The notes under the pieces are model-generated. The model searched no databases and was not told where the DNA came from. It saw nothing but the letters and a program-made list of their open reading frames with translations. 64,000 nucleotides of DNA from Diadema antillarum (Eukaryota): contig NW_027272920.1 of NCBI RefSeq assembly GCF_040938485.1, forward strand, positions 1 to 64,000, in the 5' to 3' direction. Shown piece after piece: positions 21,915 through 55,403 of this stretch. Numbering within the stretch: position 1 is the first letter of the stretch; each line of letters starts with the position of its first letter. The position numbers and the translations under genes were made by a program.

Positions 21915-22646
21915 GTGGTTTCGTATAATATTTATCGACGCTGTACGGTGACGGCTCTGGTACGAAACCATTATTGCATGATTACTAAGACATGAGAGCA
22001 CTTTGGGGCAAGTAATTCTTACAGACAACGTACTTTAACGTGAAACACAAACCAAGACAAGGAAATTCAGGGAAACTTTTGAGGTACCAAAACTTTTTAT
22101 TATCTTTAAGCAATTGCCTGATTGCCCGGGGCAAGTGAAAAATCAAAGCTGGGCAAGTGCTTTGGAGCAATAAGAAAAAAAGTTCTGAAGCCACACGTTA
22201 GCCACCTTTCTTTCATTTTTCCCCCATACAAATGTACATGTAAAAACCCACAAAATCAACCATACAAAGGCCCAAACATAATGACTGTTTAATGTCAATG
22301 CAACACACTTTAGTTTCATTTCAGCAACTTTCCAACACTTACAAGAAGAACCCCATTGCAATGCAATGTCAAAACTTGATCAAACCAAGTTTGTTACTCC
22401 AATGTATTCAAGCGTGCAAATCGATGTGCATGTTTATTCAAATGATTGTGTTTTATTGAGCCCTTGACGTACTGTATACGTGATTTCCTAGAACCCTATC
22501 AGTTTCTTATATTTTTGGACTTCCTTATGGGCAAGTAAAGTTGACGTTTGGGCAAGTGTTCTGCAACAATTTGAAAATCTGCTTGCCTGACTGCTGGGCC
22601 TGGGCAAGTGGTCAACATTGAAGAGGTATTGTATGAACATAGTACC

Positions 22647-22803
22647 TAGACAGAAAAATCTGTCTGTCCGGAGGAGTCTTTCATCATTTTTTGACTTTAT
22701 CGTCTCTTCTTTGTATAGCTGTATAGTAGGGGATTCTGAAGCCAGACGCAGTCTCTGCAGAACATATCCCCGACGACCAGATACTGACCGATCTTTCGGT
22801 TGA
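22647..22803. mobile_element. 157-bp short copy of the element at 54241-54999
   Basis: Left part matches 54241-54305, right part matches 54910-54999; flanks CATAGTACC / TGTAGCACC fit a decayed 9-bp duplication. Confidence 0.75.
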
Positions 22804-23847
22804 TGTAGCACCATGTTTAGAGGTCAACACTAAGCATGACCCCTGCCCCTAAACCCTTGCCCCTTGTTTTGCTGATACAGTGCTCACTGCTCGGGAAGGG
22901 TCGGGAGACATGCTTTTCTCTCGTTTAAGTGGTGCTCCTGCTTAGGCGGTGGCTGGTATTGGCCCGTGCAAACTACACAACATGAAGCCCAGTATGTGGG
23001 CATTACGTTCACTAAACCATGCAGTTATCAAATCCGCTGATAACCACAGCAACAAATGCACGTACGCTATAACACACAGACACCAAATGGCGATAAGAAA
23101 AGACACAGCAGTCTCATAATTTTGGTAAATGCATCATCGGAACAAACCTTCATTCATTTGATCCACATAATAACCCTCTTTTGGAGTTCAAAGGTTACCA
23201 AACAAGTCAAGATGCACACCCTATTAAAGTCGGACGATCGTCACCCCTAATGGTGCGTTATTTCGTAATCTCCCGAACAACCGAAGTTTGTGCATGCAAT
23301 TGCGCAATGCCAGACTCGGTGCTATATCCATAAATGTGTAGGACAATGCTGCCACTGAGACACGTGTGTGTGTGTGTGCATGTGTGTACGCATCATACAC
23401 AAACATTGTGACCGCGAGCTGTGGTGATTGGAGGAGAGAGGCCAGAAGACGCGTGGCTCTTTTGGCCTCTCTTCATGCGCATGCACACTGTGAGTGTGCG
23501 TCCATTCAGAAGCTCTCGTGGCTCGGGCAGTCATTTTGGGTCAGGAGATTTGTAGTCTAAAGTGTTGTTCGCTGACCCATTAAGCCAGCCAGCGCTATTC
23601 TCATTCGGCGTCACTGCATTTGGTACAGAATGGGGGAGGCAGCGTGTTGCGTTCGTCTCCGTGCCGCACAAACCACTCGCCACGATTGTAAGGCTTTGAT
23701 GCAGAGAAAGAGGCAGCTATGCTATAAACTTCGACACCCTGTTTAACATGCAACATATTACGATGACACTGATTGTGACAATTGTACAAACACATTTGTC
23801 TCATATCCATGGCCCCTGCCCCGTTCATGTTCTGCTGTCACACACAA

Positions 23848-50800: not shown

Positions 50801-52469
50801 CCTTCCCGTATATGCAACTTTGATCACTAATACGTGCAAGTTTTCTCCCCCCCCCCCCCTCCACTCACATCTAACCTATGTTCCATGTGTACATGGTCAT
50901 GTTCAATAATGAACCAGGTTCGGGTTAAAAGTAACACATTGTTAGGTGGTAGACACACATTCTAGAATTTGATCTGGTACTGCGATCCTTGTAGCATAAG
51001 TGGTTGTCTCTCAAATATTTACTAAACTTCTCATACATGCAGATCGCTCATCTACATTCCTAATCACTGACGCACATGAATCCAGTAACAAGAGTCAGCA
51101 AACTTGTATACCCTAGTACCAGAAAACCACTTTGAGTGAACAATAAGTTTGCTTGGAACCACGGGGATTGGCTAAAATTGCTTCGAAAGGTCTGGTTATC
51201 CAGGTCACTTATTCTTAGGTCAAGCCAGTATTTCACTTACTGTGCTCCACTTCCTGAAGATCATTGAAACAAGGCTGCTATTGTAGGGTGACCACTTACT
51301 ACATCAAGCCATACTACAGTTCATCTTGTGATAGTGTCCCTACGTGCACATTGGGTATAGAGAGAGGGTTGTGGATACCACACCTTGGTTAAAAGACCAA
51401 GGAGAGAACTACCAGGACAGGGACTAAATTTGATCTGCAAAAATTTCTACCTACTGAAATACATGTAAATTGCTCACCGATGTAATGCTCAAGGTCAATC
51501 TGCTGGAATATGACTGAATCTTTGTTGGGGTTTATGGGTGGCAGAGGTGGGCGGGGCCATTTTGGGTGCTTGCTCTGAGAGGAACCTGAAGTTTTGAAAA
51601 ATGGTGGAAAGACAGTAAATCATGGGAAATATTATGGTATGTACATCATAGTTCAGATGGTCAAATACAATCACATTAAATTAACACTTCTTGCTAAGTT
51701 CTTAGCAAGTGAACTGATGAAGAGAATACATTTAATTATCAACAAGTTGATAAACCAAATTATGATTTATCACATAATGCCATAGAAACAAAAAAGGGGG
51801 GAAAATGTGCTCAATAATGACTAGGCCTACAGATTGGTAATTCTGACTTATACTCCAATTGTCTGCATAACAGTTTAAACTCACTTCCTACACATTGTAC
51901 AAGACATTGAGATTCAAGTGATATTGCTGCACTAAATATATTTTGTGGACTTGTAATATATGGCAAATCAAAATAACTTTAGTTATACATGTCTTCAGGC
52001 TTGTGTAAACCATTAAGATTTGTGATGAAAGCTGCATTCATTTGATATAAAATGGATTTCTCTTTCTTTTATTTCCAAATGGACCTCTGTGAAGGAAGGG
52101 AAAAGTTTTGTTCAGTCAAAGAAAAAAAAAACTCTTTTTACAGTAACAATCTTAATTTTTGTAATCACACTCCTACACTGTATTGTACTTTTATGCTGAA
52201 AGTTATCTTGTGCTGAAGAAAAAAGGAAACCCAAGATACTGAATACATTGATCATGCATATAATCACCTTGGCTGGAGGGTGGAGTTAGCTCAGTTGCTG
52301 ATCCATTGGTCTCTTGTGACTCATACTCTGCCTCAATCTGCTCCATCAGAGCAAGTTCTTCTTCAAAGACTGATGGATCATGATCATCAAAGTCAGGCAA
52401 GCGAGCTCGCTTTGACTGAGAACCACTCCCCCTTGGGGTGCCACTTGGTTTTCGTTTATTTGAATCCAT
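33329..52469 (-). CDS. POLD1: DNA polymerase delta catalytic subunit, whole coding span: 21 exons, 3309 nt, 1102 aa
   Basis: Phase-consistent exons give Exo[11 protein letters not shown], Exo[14 protein letters not shown], ExoIII YCLKDA, motif A DFSSLYPS, motif [14 protein letters not shown], motif C YGDTDS, and CysA and CysB. Confidence 0.98.
34234..34331 (-). CDS. POLD1: POLD1 exon 20 (CysB: [19 protein letters not shown])
   Basis: TTTAG acceptor, CAG|GTGAGA donor, 98 nt. Confidence 0.95.
34440..35472 (+). mobile_element. Helentron-associated non-autonomous element (HINE; pearl/DINE-1-like) in a POLD1 intron
   Basis: 5' ATGCCTCC (34470-34477), internal GACCTTTGACC repeats, (ACGG)n microsatellite 35341-35423, 3' hairpin ATGCCTCC...GGAGGCAT, A-rich end. 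Confidence 0.85.
36101..36270 (-). CDS. POLD1: POLD1 exon 19 (GEHT...KCLGCK...VCKFC, CysA)
   Basis: TTGCAG acceptor, GAG|GTATGT donor, 170 nt. Confidence 0.95.
37105..37237 (-). CDS. POLD1: POLD1 exon 18 ([22 protein letters not shown]...)
   Basis: TTCAG acceptor, GTAAGT donor, 133 nt. Confidence 0.95.
38108..38210 (-). CDS. POLD1: POLD1 exon 17 ([21 protein letters not shown]...)
   Basis: TTCTAG acceptor, GAG|GTGGGG donor, 103 nt. Confidence 0.95.
39054..39206 (-). CDS. POLD1: POLD1 exon 16 ([32 protein letters not shown]...)
   Basis: TACAG acceptor, AAG|GTGAGA donor, 153 nt. Confidence 0.95.
39245..40131 (+). mobile_element. Second HINE-type element with two tandem cores of about 325 bp in a POLD1 intron
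   Basis: 5' GCTCACCTGAG (39268-39278), repeats starting near 39397 and 39721, GACG microsatellite, 3' hairpin AGCTCACTTGAGCC-TTT-GGCTCAGGTGAGCT. Confidence 0.85.
40567..40739 (-). CDS. POLD1: POLD1 exon 15 ([16 protein letters not shown]...[11 protein letters not shown])
   Basis: TATAG acceptor, CAG|GTTTGA donor, 173 nt. Confidence 0.95.
41520..41657 (-). CDS. POLD1: POLD1 exon 14 (motif [12 protein letters not shown]...IKLEFEK)
   Basis: GTTAG acceptor, AAG|GTGAAC donor, 138 nt. Confidence 0.95.
41801..42044 (-). CDS. POLD1: POLD1 exon 13 (motif [21 protein letters not shown])
   Basis: CCCTAG acceptor, AAG|GTGAGA donor, 244 nt. Confidence 0.95.
42888..43001 (-). CDS. POLD1: POLD1 exon 12 ([17 protein letters not shown]...ARKR)
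   Basis: TACAG acceptor, AAG|GTTTGT donor, 114 nt. Confidence 0.93.
43915..44025 (-). CDS. POLD1: POLD1 exon 11 (motif [20 protein letters not shown])
   Basis: TACAG acceptor, GTAAGT donor, 111 nt. Confidence 0.95.
44132..44216. mobile_element. 85-bp piggyBac-like mini-MITE
   Basis: TTAA|CCCATTGAGGATG ... CATCTTCAACGGG|TTAA. Confidence 0.65.
44603..44691 (-). CDS. POLD1: POLD1 exon 10 ([30 protein letters not shown])
   Basis: TTTCAG acceptor, GG|GTAAAC donor, 89 nt, phase 0 to 2; the only intact candidate found between exons 9 and 11. Confidence 0.9.
45147..45627. mobile_element. MITE with about 17-bp TIRs (Harbinger-like, inferred)
   Basis: GGGTGCGTTTATCTAAA ... TTTAGATAAACACAGCC; no clean target duplication. 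Confidence 0.55.
45783..45974 (-). CDS. POLD1: POLD1 exon 9 ([18 protein letters not shown]...SQLLRK)
   Basis: TCCAG acceptor, AAG|GTATGT donor, 192 nt. Confidence 0.95.
46479..46691. mobile_element. Short pogo-like MITE, same family as 1469-2441
   Basis: TA|CAGGTGACTCCCCATCATAATGAAGTCCTCC ... TTATGAAGGGAGTGCATTG|TA. Confidence 0.7.
46834..46944 (-). CDS. POLD1: POLD1 exon 8 ([21 protein letters not shown]...TDLQ)
   Basis: CTTAG acceptor, CAG|GTGAGA donor, 111 nt. Confidence 0.95.
47459..47704 (-). CDS. POLD1: POLD1 exon 7 (Exo[25 protein letters not shown]...)
   Basis: ACCAG acceptor, CAG|GTATTT donor, 246 nt. Confidence 0.95.
47735..47920. repeat. (TAGA)n microsatellite next to the POLD1 exon 7 acceptor
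   Basis: Long GATA run. Confidence 0.95.
48564..48730 (-). CDS. POLD1: POLD1 exon 6 ([15 protein letters not shown]...EMLQ)
   Basis: TTCAG acceptor, CAG|GTACTG donor, 167 nt. Confidence 0.95.
49167..49390 (-). CDS. POLD1: POLD1 exon 5 ([14 protein letters not shown]...Exo[11 protein letters not shown])
   Basis: CTATAG acceptor, AAG|GTAAGA donor, 224 nt. Confidence 0.95.
49724..49892 (-). CDS. POLD1: POLD1 exon 4 (IYGYHGNK...[11 protein letters not shown])
   Basis: CAAAG acceptor, CAG|GTAAAA donor, 169 nt. Confidence 0.93.
50257..50523 (-). CDS. POLD1: POLD1 exon 3 ([28 protein letters not shown]...)
   Basis: TCCAG acceptor, GTATGT donor, 267 nt. Confidence 0.93.
51478..51585 (-). CDS. POLD1: POLD1 exon 2 ([28 protein letters not shown])
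   Basis: TTCAG acceptor, GTGAGC donor, 108 nt. Confidence 0.93.
52268..52469 (-). CDS. POLD1: POLD1 exon 1 (MDSNKRKP...FEEELALM...)
   Basis: TGTAG|A-ATG start, basic NLS-like segment, FEEEL motif, AAG|GTGATT donor. Confidence 0.9.
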
Positions 52470-53729
52470 TCTACACAAAGTAAAAGAAACATAAAACAAA
52501 ACCTCTGATCAAAATGTACAGACATAATGACATCATGACATGAATGTTTGCATGGCAGTGAACTGTCTTCTCACTAAGCTTACCTTCATGCAATCATTTG
52601 CTGCTCATAGTTCTCAAGATGCTTTAAACACCTGCAGCATCAATTATGCTTACTTTTGCTCTCAACCATGACAGCAATGTTTCTGTGAAGTGGCCTGGAA
52701 ATCAACAAGTGATGATTCGTTTCATTTGTATCTCTTAGCATCATATTTTAATTTTAGCATCTTTATAAGTGTCCCATTTTACATACTTTACACATACGTT
52801 CTGTACAATAATTCATACCCGCTGTTCACTTGCTATTTCCAGATTGATCCCATGGTCTTGAAAACATGTTTTTCTACGATTTCTTCTTTCATTTTTAAAA
52901 AACAACCTGTGTGTGGCATATTGTGCATTGGTGATATGAATATGCAGGAGTGTTGCAATGTTTTTAATCTATGGACAAGGCCCTTTTGCTGTGTAGCGGT
53001 GAGTGAAAGGGTTTAAGTGAAACACAAAAGTTGCATGTCTCCTGTTGTCAACAATTGGACTACATTTGTATGTATTCAAATTGATGCAATTTTTAGTCTT
53101 TAAGTTTTTAAGGGCAATACTACCCCATAGCAGATCTATTAAATATATGTGTTTAGTATAACCCCAAAAGCACACTTAAGATTTAATTGTTGCTGCTGCA
53201 AATGACCTCGAACACTGTACCGTGATAGCCCACCAGGGCGTTGTGTGCAGTATACAACCAGAACCAGAACCAGAACCAAACACTTCACGTTCGGGCTGGT
53301 CGCAGCTAACTTCAAAACAAACAATGTCATTAGTGATTACATGTCTGTGCTGTGTCCCTGATGAATAGTGCTCTACACCATGTATAGTGAGGTGCCCGCA
53401 CTTTGTCAGGGGCCCTAATATCGTCACCCTGCGTAAAATTGCTACAAGTGCACTGAACAAAAATGTACCCCTGGGATTGTGTTCAGTACACTTGAAACTT
53501 TGCAGGGTTACCAGTAGTAGTACCACAACCAAGCAGACTGAGGTGAAAAACGGAACAGTTTTTCTTGAAAATCTTAAATTTGTATGAAGTATGAGGGATA
53601 ATTAAGTGTTATCAAGTATCATTATCGTCACCCACACACGTCTTTTACGTGCTTTGACCTTTGTCTATGCGAGTACGGGGTGGTGAGGTGCGGGCCCCTT
53701 CCTTAGCGCACATCTATTTTGCATTGTTC

Positions 53730-53960
53730 GCGTTTGACGATGATAGCTGCAAATTTCCAGTATCGATCATTGAACTTGCACTTGCAGTTCCATTGGCATT
53801 TGCAGTTCCATTGGCGTTTGACGATGATAGATAGCTGCAAATTTCCAGTATCGATCATTGAACTTGCAGTTCCATTGGCATTTGCAGTTCCATTGGCGTT
53901 TGACGATGATAGCTGCAAATTTCCAGTATCGATCATCGAACTTGCAGTTCCATTGGCATT
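53730..53960. repeat. Minisatellite, three copies of a 78-bp core
   Basis: Units start at 53730, 53814 and 53896 (core plus 6-nt and 4-nt insertions); internal TTGCAGTTCCATTGGCA sub-repeat. Confidence 0.9.
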
Positions 53961-54240
53961 GGAATCTCCGGCATTTTTCCTTTATGTACATGGTATTTCA
54001 TAGAATTTCAGTGACGTGGGGTGATGACATGCACATGCGTATTAAACATTAACTATTAGAGAAAAATAAGAGTATTAAATCTAGGCACCCTACTGTTAGT
54101 CTAACGTTAGTAGCAGTATTTTATTTTTAGATGACGAGGACCACACGAGGTGCGGGTCACACGCATGTAAGTACGCACGGTACGCAGCCGCTGTCGCTTC
54201 GCGACAGCGCCACAGCGGTCTGGTCAGGCTAGTACGCACC

Positions 54241-54999
54241 TAGACAGAAAGATCCGTCTGTCCGGAGGACTCTTTTATATTTTGCCATTAACGCTGTCCT
54301 CCGTAGACAGACGGAAGGTTGCAGTACCCATTGCTGTGTGGATGTTCTTAACCACTGTCTCTATGGAAAATTGGGTGAGGTACCTCACCCTTCTCGATTG
54401 CGTCTAATTCACGGCCCTAGGTCGGCAAATTTAAGCTTGTATAGTGGAATCAACTATTCAAGAGTATATTGCACTCACCAGATGAATGAATAATCCAACA
54501 TTTTGGTCGAATTTTCAACGTAAAACACACGTCAACCAGCCCGTCGCGTCGTCACGTTCAAACTGCAGCAACATACAGTACGAATCTATTAGCCAATCAC
54601 ATGCGAGGTAGTTTCTACGTGTTTTTTTTACTGAAACACGTACCTCACATGTGATTGGCTTACAGATTCAAAATGGCGACTTACGGCTAGCGGACGGCGA
54701 TGTTGCGATATGGATAAAATTTCTGCGTTATAACCGAGTTACTGTGAGTATTTCGATTGCAAAATGTGAGAAATTAACCCCAAATGTTGCTGCATAATGT
54801 GTCATGTCATGTCAAACTTATTTGAATGTAAAAAAGCTGCCTGAAATTTGGTTTATCGTAACGTTTGATCTGTGCGCTACTGCCACACAGGAGCTGGCAT
54901 CATTGACTTCGGTCTGTATACGGAGGGGATCCGTGAAGCCAGACGCAGTCTCCGCGGAACATTCCCCGACGGACAGATACAGACCGATCTTTCGGTCAA
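54241..54999. mobile_element. 759-bp TIR element with an exact 9-bp target duplication (Mutator-like, inferred)
   Basis: GTACGCACC at 54232-54240 and 55000-55008; TIRs 18/21 identical; a second inner inverted pair at 54298-54317 / 54907-54926. Confidence 0.8.
54582..54669. promoter_or_regulatory. Dyad of inverted CCAAT + E-box modules
   Basis: AGCCAATCACATGCGAGGTA (54591-54610) and TACCTCACATGTGATTGGCT (54641-54660) are 19/20 complementary, extended by GAATCT/AGATTC. Confidence 0.55.
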
Positions 55000-55403
55000 G
55001 TACGCACCTAGCAATCAATACGACAAGAGATCGCTAACAACTGAAAATACAATCGTAATTCGCCAATGAGAAGAGTGACAACACAACAAATTACTGTGAT
55101 ATATATTATCACGGTCCCGGTAATCCTAATGAGTAATGTAAATTTAGATTGCGCCTACTGAATGACGTCCACTGCACTGTCACTTCCGCCAACAAAATTT
55201 AGCATATATGGGACTAGTCTATAAGAAGAGTATCAAGGATTCTTGGACACCTTGCTATCGATTTAGCCTGCTTAATGAATGCTGGTTTGTAGAACTAAAA
55301 AAAAAAAAAAAAATGATTCATTCATTTTACTGATATATGCATATTGCCTGCAAATCTATTTTCTACTTATGAATTGATAGTGCTTTGATGTGGTGTCGTT
55401 TAC

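What the first reader, a model, noticed from the sequence alone, without database searches (positions are those of the whole stretch)
54232..55008. Transposon-like element with a 9-bp target duplication encloses a promoter-like core upstream of POLD1
Seen: exact GTACGCACC duplications flank a 759-bp element with 21-bp TIRs and a second inner inverted pair. Its core holds a symmetric CCAAT/E-box dyad almost at the element midpoint (about 54625 vs 54620), TTCAAA (CHR-like) hexamers at 54557 and 54667, a YY1-like AAAATGGCG at 54670, an 18-bp perfect palindrome GGGTGAGGTACCTCACCC (54373-54390), and outward-facing GTGAGT splice donors on both strands (minus 54478, plus 54744). A core-less sibling lies at 22647-22803. 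Established: 9-bp duplications typify Mutator-like elements, which can capture host DNA (Pack-MULEs). Inference: a mobile bidirectional promoter and first-exon cassette, either captured from or donated to a cell-cycle gene, 1.8 kb upstream of the POLD1 start exon.
Basis: partly seen in the sequence, partly recalled or inferred. Interest (0 to 1): 0.72.

Follow-up and report, generated by a model that had tools for sequence, protein, structure and literature searches.

The report
Young passenger transposon upstream of POLD1
This is a freshly inserted copy, present on only one of the animal's two chromosome copies, of a gene-less "jumping DNA" family with over a thousand near-identical copies in this sea-urchin genome; its promoter-looking middle is in every copy, so it was not captured from or built for the POLD1 gene.

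Summary
Window 54241-54999 is a 759-bp element with imperfect 21-bp terminal inverted repeats, an exact 9-bp target duplication (GTACGCACC), an inner inverted pair and an 88-nt central palindrome carrying two inverted CCAAT boxes.

It is not locus-specific. The 5' end occurs 2527 times, the 3' end 1941 times and the core arm 1093 times in this apparently two-haplotype 1.75-Gb assembly. All 29 full copies examined lie at different sites, and 26 have their own exact 9-bp duplication.

The allelic contig has a clean empty site, so this insertion is hemizygous and very recent. A second young copy is hemizygous too. The family inserts at a palindromic target, GCWW-N9-WWGC, which the POLD1 site fits exactly.

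No transposase partner was found. Mutator-like is the best guess, from duplication length only. Merlin fails its terminal-GG rule.

No stand-alone copy of the core was seen, so capture from a host gene is unsupported. Promoter and first-exon activity could not be tested, because no RNA run was listed.

Verdict: an ordinary, currently mobile non-autonomous DNA transposon with a possible but unshown regulatory cargo. The scan has noted similar 9-bp-duplication passenger families on other DNA of this genome.

The parts
54241..54999 (+). 759-bp non-autonomous DNA transposon, subfamily A copy, hemizygous
   Evidence: Full-length matches of 95-100% at 40 of 40 scored genomic places out of 1984 candidates. 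Absent from allelic contig C470. Longest ORFs inside or overlapping it are 51-77 aa.
54232..54240 (.). left copy of the 9-bp target site duplication GTACGCACC
   Evidence: It occurs once at the empty allelic site.
55000..55008 (.). right copy of the 9-bp target site duplication
54228..54231 (.). left half of the palindromic target motif (GCTA; family preference GCWW)
   Evidence: Across 29 sites, G at -4 in 21 of 29 (p = 3e-10) and C at -3 in 18 of 29 (p = 6e-7).
55009..55012 (.). right half of the palindromic target motif (TAGC; family preference WWGC)
   Evidence: G at +11 in 20 of 29 and C at +12 in 20 of 29, p about 1e-8 to 3e-9.
54241..54261 (+). 5' terminal inverted repeat TAGACAGAAAGATCCGTCTGT
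   Evidence: Identical in 26 of 29 copies. The 29-nt terminus occurs 2527 times in the genome, control 0.
54979..54999 (+). 3' terminal inverted repeat ACAGACCGATCTTTCGGTCAA
   Evidence: Identical in 27 of 29 copies. The 29-nt terminus occurs 1941 times, control 0.
54298..54317 (+). left subterminal inverted repeat; holds a second TAGACAG and a CAGACGG motif
   Evidence: CAGAC(C/G)G lies symmetrically at element positions 14(-), 68(+), 670(-) and 740(+). I infer these are transposase binding sites.
54907..54926 (+). right subterminal inverted repeat
   Evidence: Invariant in 29 of 29 copies.
54373..54390 (.). 18-bp perfect palindrome GGGTGAGGTACCTCACCC
   Evidence: Invariant in 29 of 29 copies. 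It shares GTACCTCAC with the right arm of the central dyad.
54582..54669 (.). 88-nt central palindrome with two inverted CCAAT boxes
   Evidence: Arms 29 nt, 90%. Kept in both subfamilies and more perfect in B. The left arm occurs 1093 times in the genome. Only sub-threshold generic hairpin matches in Rfam.
22647..22803 (+). old short-class (157 bp) member of the same family, with a decayed 9-bp duplication at 22638-22646 and 22804-22812
   Evidence: Young short copies equal element positions 1-66 plus 674-759 (C127:1949707-1949858).
52206..52471 (-). putative first coding exon of POLD1 (ATG at 52469), preceded by a polypyrimidine tract and AG
   Evidence: Its assignment to POLD1 is inferred. 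The downstream exon 50222-50506 (-) matches human Pol delta residues 116-198 with E = 1.7e-24.

Best explanation
Window 54241-54999 is a hemizygous, very recent insertion of a non-coding, non-autonomous cut-and-paste DNA transposon.

The family comes in two size classes:
- about 750-770 bp, which carries the core;
- about 116-157 bp, which lacks it. Young short copies equal element positions 1-66 plus 674-759.

How it most likely moves (inferred): a transposase supplied in trans, not identified here, binds the CAGAC(C/G)G motifs in the terminal and subterminal repeats. It excises the element and inserts it by a 9-bp staggered cut. The insertion at palindromic GCWW-N9-WWGC targets is shown. The site 1.77 kb upstream of the POLD1 start codon is simply a perfect match to that target (GCTA-GTACGCACC-TAGC).

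The promoter-like core is part of the family's master sequence. That covers the central palindrome with two CCAAT boxes, the TTCAAA and AAAATGGCG motifs and the GTGAGT motifs. It was not captured at this locus and POLD1 does not need it.

The superfamily is most likely Mutator-like. I put that at about 0.55, and it rests on duplication length alone.
For: - Family size: 1984 first-look candidates, and all 40 scored are full length at 95-100%. Termini occur 2527 and 1941 times and the core arm 1093 times, with controls at 0.
- Independent insertions: 29 full copies sit in unrelated flanks. Of these, 26 have an exact private 9-bp duplication and 1 has a single mismatch.
- Empty site: allelic contig C470 is 98.6% identical over 3 kb of left flank and 98.7% over 1.15 kb of more distal right flank (from 55348). 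It holds a single AGTACGCACCTAG and no element.
- Second case: the near-identical copy on C669 (99.7%) is also missing from its allelic contig C5, which keeps one 9-bp target.
- Target motif: p = 3e-10 to 6e-7 at four flanking positions.
- Size classes and nested-insertion variants.
- No coding capacity: ORFs of 77 aa or less.
- The element's CpG o/e is 1.16 against 0.49 for the window, as expected for a young copy.
- Mutator-like elements make 8-11-bp duplications and occur in echinoderms (PMC6446971).
Against: - No autonomous partner was found.
  - The 22 PF10551 (MULE domain) hits are single loci seen on two haplotypes, with no family terminus within 1.5 to 5 kb.
  - PF00872 gave nothing.
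  - Searches for termini joined to foreign subterminal DNA gave no properly oriented pair on one contig.
- The 21-bp terminal repeats are short for a Mutator-like element.
- Because no RNA data could be laid on the locus, a regulatory effect on POLD1 or a neighbour is not excluded.
- Only about 30 copies, the ones most like the query, were examined base by base.
Confidence: 0.88

Rival explanations
1. The element is a Pack-MULE-like cassette whose core is a bidirectional promoter plus first exons, captured from or donated to a cell-cycle gene. It now supplies an alternative promoter and leader exon to POLD1, using the minus-strand donor at 54478 and the acceptor at about 52471.
For: - Two perfect NF-Y-type CCAAT boxes lie in inverted orientation in a conserved palindrome, with outward GTGAGT on both strands.
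- The POLD1 ATG exon does begin at a 3' splice site at about 52471.
- The element is CpG-rich and lies in CpG-undepleted DNA upstream of a gene.
Against: - The core occurs about 1093 times, and all 37 sampled hits lie inside full family elements. No host parent copy was seen.
- The insertion is absent from the other haplotype, so it is neither the normal POLD1 promoter nor an old donation.
- The motifs are short, and the palindrome doubles them automatically.
- There is no similarity to coding sequence, with ORFs of 77 aa or less.
- Candidate leader-exon donors lie much closer to the ATG exon, at about 52583 and 52655.
- No transcript evidence could be obtained.
Confidence: 0.06
2. It is the same passenger transposon, but its conserved central palindrome is a functional cargo spread by the family. 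It could act as an NF-Y-type enhancer or promoter, or as a hairpin that yields small RNAs. Insertions would then change expression of neighbouring genes without any capture from a host gene. This reading is compatible with the best explanation.
For: - The palindrome arms and both CCAAT boxes are kept in both subfamilies. The arms pair perfectly in subfamily B, while the region next to the loop varies.
- The hairpin folds at about -46 kcal/mol.
- The whole element folds far better than shuffles, z = -6.3.
- MITE families are known to spread transcription-factor motifs (PMC5950925; title and abstract seen).
Against: - Copies are 95-100% alike, so conservation mostly reflects youth rather than selection.
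- Rfam hairpin matches are far below gathering scores, 22-33 bits against 70-110.
- There are no expression or binding data.
Confidence: 0.15
3. The family belongs to the Merlin superfamily rather than Mutator. It would be moved by one of the many Merlin-type transposases in this genome.
For: - Merlin elements make 8- or 9-bp duplications (PMC8101967).
- The genome holds 86 PF12762 matches, several as multi-copy intact ORFs at 99.6-99.9% identity. Active Merlin-type transposases are therefore far more evident than Mutator-type ones.
Against: - Merlin terminal repeats have a conserved terminal 5'-GG (PMC8101967). This family starts TAGAC and TTGAC.
- None of the 10 Merlin loci checked carries the family terminus.
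- The one mapped Merlin terminus, and a second similarity break of uncertain nature, read quite differently.
Confidence: 0.1

Closest known systems
Non-autonomous Mutator-like elements (MULEs), including short-TIR groups
   Same: A constant 9-bp target duplication, which is within the 8-11 bp that defines MULEs (PMC6446971). Also terminal plus subterminal inverted motifs, high copy number, non-random bases flanking the duplication, and presence near gene 5' regions.
   Different: The terminal repeats are only 21 bp and imperfect. No MULE transposase sharing the termini was found. The MULE-domain genes in this genome look single-locus.
Pack-MULEs of plants
   Same: A transposase-less element with a 9-bp duplication and an interior unrelated to any transposase.
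   Different: Pack-MULEs are defined by recognisable host gene fragments. Here no host copy of the interior was seen, and the interior does not code for anything.
MITE families that spread cis-regulatory motifs (for example plant MITEs carrying transcription-factor sites, PMC5950925; rice mPing, from my own knowledge)
   Same: A short non-coding element recently amplified to hundreds or thousands of copies. It carries conserved binding-site-like motifs, is polymorphic between haplotypes and lands upstream of genes.
   Different: No binding or expression effect has been shown for this family. At 759 bp the core-bearing class is longer than a typical MITE. Only the 116-157-bp class is MITE-sized.
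Merlin superfamily
   Same: 8-9-bp target duplications, and abundant intact transposases in this genome.
   Different: The defining terminal 5'-GG is absent, and no Merlin locus checked has these termini.
Sea-urchin non-coding foldback and long-TIR families already noted in this genome by the scan (s1-215047, s1-215063)
   Same: Enzyme-less, 9-bp duplication, polymorphic between haplotypes.
   Different: Those are 6.8-13 kb with long arms. This family is 0.14-0.76 kb, with 21-bp ends and only a central 88-nt palindrome. I did not test for sequence relatedness.

Membership tests
Cut-and-paste (TIR) DNA transposon, non-autonomous | Terminal inverted repeats at fixed ends shared by all copies | tested here: met
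   The same 21-nt ends are in 26-27 of 29 copies.
Cut-and-paste (TIR) DNA transposon, non-autonomous | Target site duplication of constant length, different at each copy | tested here: met
   9 bp: exact in 26 of 29 copies, one mismatch in 1, ends damaged in 2.
Cut-and-paste (TIR) DNA transposon, non-autonomous | Empty site holding a single copy of the target | tested here: met
   C470 for this copy; C5 for the C669 copy.
Cut-and-paste (TIR) DNA transposon, non-autonomous | No transposase gene inside | tested here: met
   759 bp with ORFs of 77 aa or less.
Mutator-like elements (MULE) | 8-11-bp target duplication (PMC6446971) | tested here: met
   9 bp.
Mutator-like elements (MULE) | Mobilised by a MULE (PF10551-type) transposase whose element shares the termini | tested here: inconclusive
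   22 PF10551 hits, with no family terminus within 1.5 to 5 kb of those checked. PF00872 gave no hit.
Mutator-like elements (MULE) | Long terminal repeats (typical, not universal; some groups have 20-38 bp) | tested here: not met
   21 bp, 18 of 21 paired.
Pack-MULE | Interior made of recognisable host gene fragments that also exist at a parent locus without the termini | tested here: inconclusive
   All 37 sampled core hits lie inside full elements. A diverged parent could not be sought, because only 40 candidates are scored per genome search.
Merlin superfamily | Terminal repeats ending in a conserved 5'-GG (PMC8101967) | tested here: not met
   The ends read TAGAC... and TTGAC....
Merlin superfamily | 8-9-bp target duplication | tested here: met
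   9 bp.
hAT superfamily | 8-bp target duplication and YARNG termini (from my own knowledge) | tested here: not met
   The duplication is 9 bp and the termini are TAGAC and TTGAC.
Promoter / first-exon cassette | Transcription starts and spliced reads arising in the element | not testable with these tools
   No RNA run was listed for this stretch and the single look-up is used. Read laying could therefore not be run.
Known RNA families (Rfam), including microRNA precursors | Score at or above the family's gathering threshold | tested here: not met
   No hit at gathering. The central hairpin scores 22-33 bits against thresholds of 70-110.

The most novel reading that the evidence does not exclude
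The family is a currently mobile carrier of a palindromic, NF-Y-type bidirectional promoter or enhancer. The core arm is counted 1093 times in the two-haplotype assembly, which I estimate as roughly 500 core copies per haploid genome. It lands preferentially in CpG-undepleted DNA upstream of genes. Hemizygous insertions such as this one would then create allele-specific alternative starts or altered expression of neighbours like POLD1. That would be a live case of regulatory rewiring by a DNA transposon in an echinoderm.
Probability: 0.1. Interest if true: 0.6.

Novelty: new member of a known kind. Interest (0 to 1): 0.27.

Why it matters
As it stands this is routine repeat annotation: a young non-autonomous DNA transposon family.

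Three things make it mildly useful:
- The family seems to be moving now. Two of two young copies tested are hemizygous, which makes it a handy marker and a candidate mutagen in this sea urchin.
- It has an unusually clear 17-bp palindromic target, GCWW-N9-WWGC. That could help assign its unknown transposase.
- Every long copy carries a conserved CCAAT palindrome. Hemizygous insertions next to genes therefore offer a natural allele-specific test of whether such cargo changes expression.

The report also warns against reading promoter-like motifs inside a repeat as locus-specific regulation.

Tried and rejected
- RNA evidence: the look-up of sequencing runs listed no RNA run, so read laying was never run.
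- Transposase partner, sought by protein family:
  - PF10551: 22 hits, none with family termini. Three long-ORF loci were checked over about 10 kb.
  - PF12762 Merlin: 86 hits, 10 loci checked, termini unlike.
  - PF00872: none.
- Transposase partner, sought by termini:
  - Hand-pairing the listed 5' and 3' ends gave only elements of about 140 bp, about 760 bp and 1.1-1.3 kb.
  - The 1.1-1.3-kb and 5.2-kb cases are 759-type copies with unrelated nested insertions.
  - Negative-IUPAC patterns gave 36 and 63 hits with no oriented pair. One candidate, C62, is a 206-bp short variant.
- Host parent of the core: none among the sampled hits.
- Fixation of a subfamily B copy: inconclusive, because no allelic contig was among the scored hits. 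That call also corrected my first idea that B is old: B copies are 99-100% alike.
- Rfam: nothing at threshold.
- Metagenome scan for the terminus: nothing.
- Earlier-findings search by sequence: blank.
- Literature searches found no description of this family.
- I built no spliced POLD1 model and joined no exons. Exons were checked singly by reference.

Full report
**1. What is in the sequence**

- The element runs from 54241 to 54999 (759 bp).
- Its ends are TAGACAGAAAGATCCGTCTGT and ACAGACCGATCTTTCGGTCAA, with 18 of 21 positions complementary.
- It is flanked by an exact 9-bp duplication, GTACGCACC, at 54232-54240 and 55000-55008.
- The inner inverted pair (54298-54317 / 54907-54926) and the 18-bp palindrome (54373-54390) are at the stated places.
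- So are the central dyad (54582-54610 / 54641-54669, centre 54625.5 against element midpoint 54620), the TTCAAA hexamers, AAAATGGCG and the two outward GTGAGT motifs.
- The "core-less sibling" at 22647-22803 aligns to element positions 1-43 and 674-756 at 88%. It keeps a decayed 9-bp duplication.

**2. It is one copy of a large, young family**

A search of the window's own genome gave 1984 first-look candidates. That genome is 1.75 Gb in 2963 contigs, and paired hits suggest both haplotypes are present. All 40 scored candidates were full-length 759-bp matches at 95-100% identity.

| Piece searched (29 nt, up to 2 mismatches) | Hits | Reversed control |
|---|---|---|
| 5' terminus | 2527 | 0 |
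| 3' terminus | 1941 | 0 |
| Left arm of the central palindrome | 1093 | 0 |

- Pairing the listed ends by hand shows two size classes. One is about 116-157 bp. The other is about 750-770 bp.
- Young short copies equal positions 1-66 plus 674-759 of the long form.
- Rarer elements of 1.1-1.3 kb and one of 5.2 kb are long-form copies with unrelated nested insertions.
- The 29 full copies fall into two subfamilies. A is the window type, with 8 copies at 98.7-100%. B is about 95.5% identical to A.
- B copies are 99-100% alike among themselves, so both subfamilies look recently amplified.

**3. It is mobile, and this insertion is polymorphic**

- Each of the 29 copies sits in different flanking DNA. 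Twenty-six have their own exact 9-bp duplication, one has a single mismatch and two have damaged ends.
- The allelic contig, G000:C470, is 98.6% identical to the window over 3 kb of left flank. It is 98.7% identical over 1.15 kb of more distal right flank, from 55348.
- At the insertion point C470 reads a single AGTACGCACCTAG with no element. That is a textbook empty site.
- The closest sister copy (C669, 99.7%) is likewise missing from its allelic contig C5, which keeps one 9-bp target.
- Two of two young copies tested are therefore hemizygous. This argues for very recent or continuing transposition.

**4. Target choice**

Rebuilding the 29 pre-insertion sites shows a palindromic preference outside the duplication, GCWW-N9-WWGC.

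| Position | Base | Copies (of 29) | p |
|---|---|---|---|
| -4 | G | 21 | 3e-10 |
| -3 | C | 18 | 6e-7 |
| +11 | G | 20 | 3e-9 |
| +12 | C | 20 | 1e-8 |

- The site upstream of POLD1 reads GCTA-GTACGCACC-TAGC, a perfect fit.
- That fit explains why the direct repeat looks 13 nt long. It is also enough to explain why the element landed here.
- A symmetric target with a 9-bp stagger fits a dimeric DDE-type transposase. That step is inferred.
- The motif CAGAC(C/G)G lies symmetrically at element positions 14(-), 68(+), 670(-) and 740(+). I take these as likely transposase binding sites, also by inference.

**5. The "promoter-like core" belongs to the family**

- The central palindrome is kept in both subfamilies, and its arms pair perfectly in B.
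- All 37 listed core hits on contigs C1-C37 lie at the expected offset inside full-length elements. That includes the two I had to fetch to check.
- No stand-alone copy that could be a host parent was seen. A diverged parent cannot be excluded with these tools.
- The element encodes nothing, with ORFs of 77 aa or less.
- Rfam gives nothing at threshold. The central hairpin draws only generic sub-threshold microRNA-precursor matches.
- The copies are 95-100% alike, so motif conservation mostly reflects youth and not selection.

**6. Relation to POLD1**

- POLD1 lies on the minus strand. Exon 50222-50506 matches human Pol delta residues 116-198 with E = 1.7e-24, and it matches Pfam POL3_N.
- The putative ATG exon begins at about 52471, right after a polypyrimidine tract and AG.
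- Two good GTAAGC donors lie only 100-200 bp further upstream, at about 52583 and 52655. They are more economical candidates for the native leader exon. This is inference.
- The element starts 1772 bp upstream of the ATG.
- The other haplotype lacks the element, so it cannot be the gene's normal promoter.
- Whether it adds starts or alters expression on the filled allele is untested. No RNA run was listed for this stretch and the look-up cap is one.
- I built no spliced model and joined no exons.

**7. Superfamily**

- A constant 9-bp duplication points to Mutator-like elements, which make 8-11 bp duplications and have been reported in echinoderms (PMC6446971). It could also point to Merlin, which makes 8-9 bp duplications (PMC8101967).
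- Merlin's conserved terminal 5'-GG is absent here, so I do not file the family there.
- For Mutator, the decisive feature is a transposase gene bounded by these termini. It was not found.
  - The 22 PF10551 hits look like single loci seen on two haplotypes, and none has the terminus nearby.
  - PF00872 is absent.
- Merlin-type transposases are plentiful and intact, with 86 hits. The ten loci checked do not carry the family terminus, and the one Merlin terminus I could map reads quite differently.
- Terminus-first searches also failed.
- I therefore call it Mutator-like at about 0.55. That is a statement about how it behaves, not a proven membership.

**8. Context hint**

- The 1.4 kb on either side of the 29 insertions has GC of 41-46% and CpG o/e of 0.77-0.93.
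- The comparison values for CpG o/e are 0.49 for this 64-kb window and 0.58 for other fetched loci.
- The baseline is weak. Still, it hints at a preference for CpG-undepleted DNA, as at this gene-upstream site.

**9. Verdict**

The capture, cell-cycle-promoter and first-exon parts are unsupported or untested.

This is a new member of a known kind: a currently mobile, non-coding DNA transposon family. Earlier notes of this scan describe other enzyme-less 9-bp-duplication families on other DNA of the same genome (s1-215047, s1-215063). One note names the species as Diadema antillarum and reports another transposon present on one chromosome copy and absent from the other (s1-208713). I did not check the species. 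The paired hits are consistent with a two-haplotype assembly.

Noticed in passing
window 55054-55347: About 294 bp just right of the element is also absent from the allelic contig C470. There is no clean duplication or inverted ends at its borders, so it looks like a plain indel between haplotypes.
   Followed up: partly
window 53730-53960: A minisatellite with a 78-bp unit, 2.8 copies and 90% matches, about 300 bp left of the element. It holds an 18-bp sub-repeat.
   Followed up: no
window 53380-53805 and 53890-54060: The left flank of the element holds another interspersed repeat, 73-82% identical to more than 35 other loci in the genome.
   Followed up: no
G000:C8:843447-843690; also C36:2697980-2698220, C43:1602509-1602752, C45:1592731-1592974: A composite short variant of the family has two outward-facing 3'-type ends 212-215 bp apart, with a 5' end inside. 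It recurs at four or more loci, so it is probably a sub-lineage with more symmetric ends.
   Followed up: partly
G000:C26:328531-333683 (L062 + L010): A long-form copy is split at element position 34-36 by a 4.4-kb insertion of unrelated sequence. Three other copies carry 0.4-0.6-kb nested insertions at positions 39-42, 85-86 and 190-194.
   Followed up: partly
G000:C92:539765, C147:1799354, C783:412210, C1504:657090 (L073-L076): A Merlin-type (PF12762) transposase family has an intact 479-aa frame at four or more loci that are 99.6-99.9% identical. Several other intact Merlin families exist. They look like active autonomous transposons unrelated to this element.
   Followed up: partly
G000:C999:553013-556208 and C1210:79136-80893: MULE-domain (PF10551) matches repeat in tandem within 3 kb, with four on C999 and two on its presumed allelic contig C1210. 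This is an odd arrangement for a transposase gene.
   Followed up: no
flanks of 29 family copies (L001-L030): Insertion neighbourhoods are GC- and CpG-richer (CpG o/e 0.77-0.93) than this window (0.49). This may mean a preference for unmethylated DNA, but the baseline is weak.
   Followed up: partly
window 52471-52700 (minus strand): The POLD1 ATG exon starts at a 3' splice site. GTAAGC donors at about 52583 and 52655 suggest a short untranslated leader exon, and the native promoter, within about 300 bp upstream of it.
   Followed up: no
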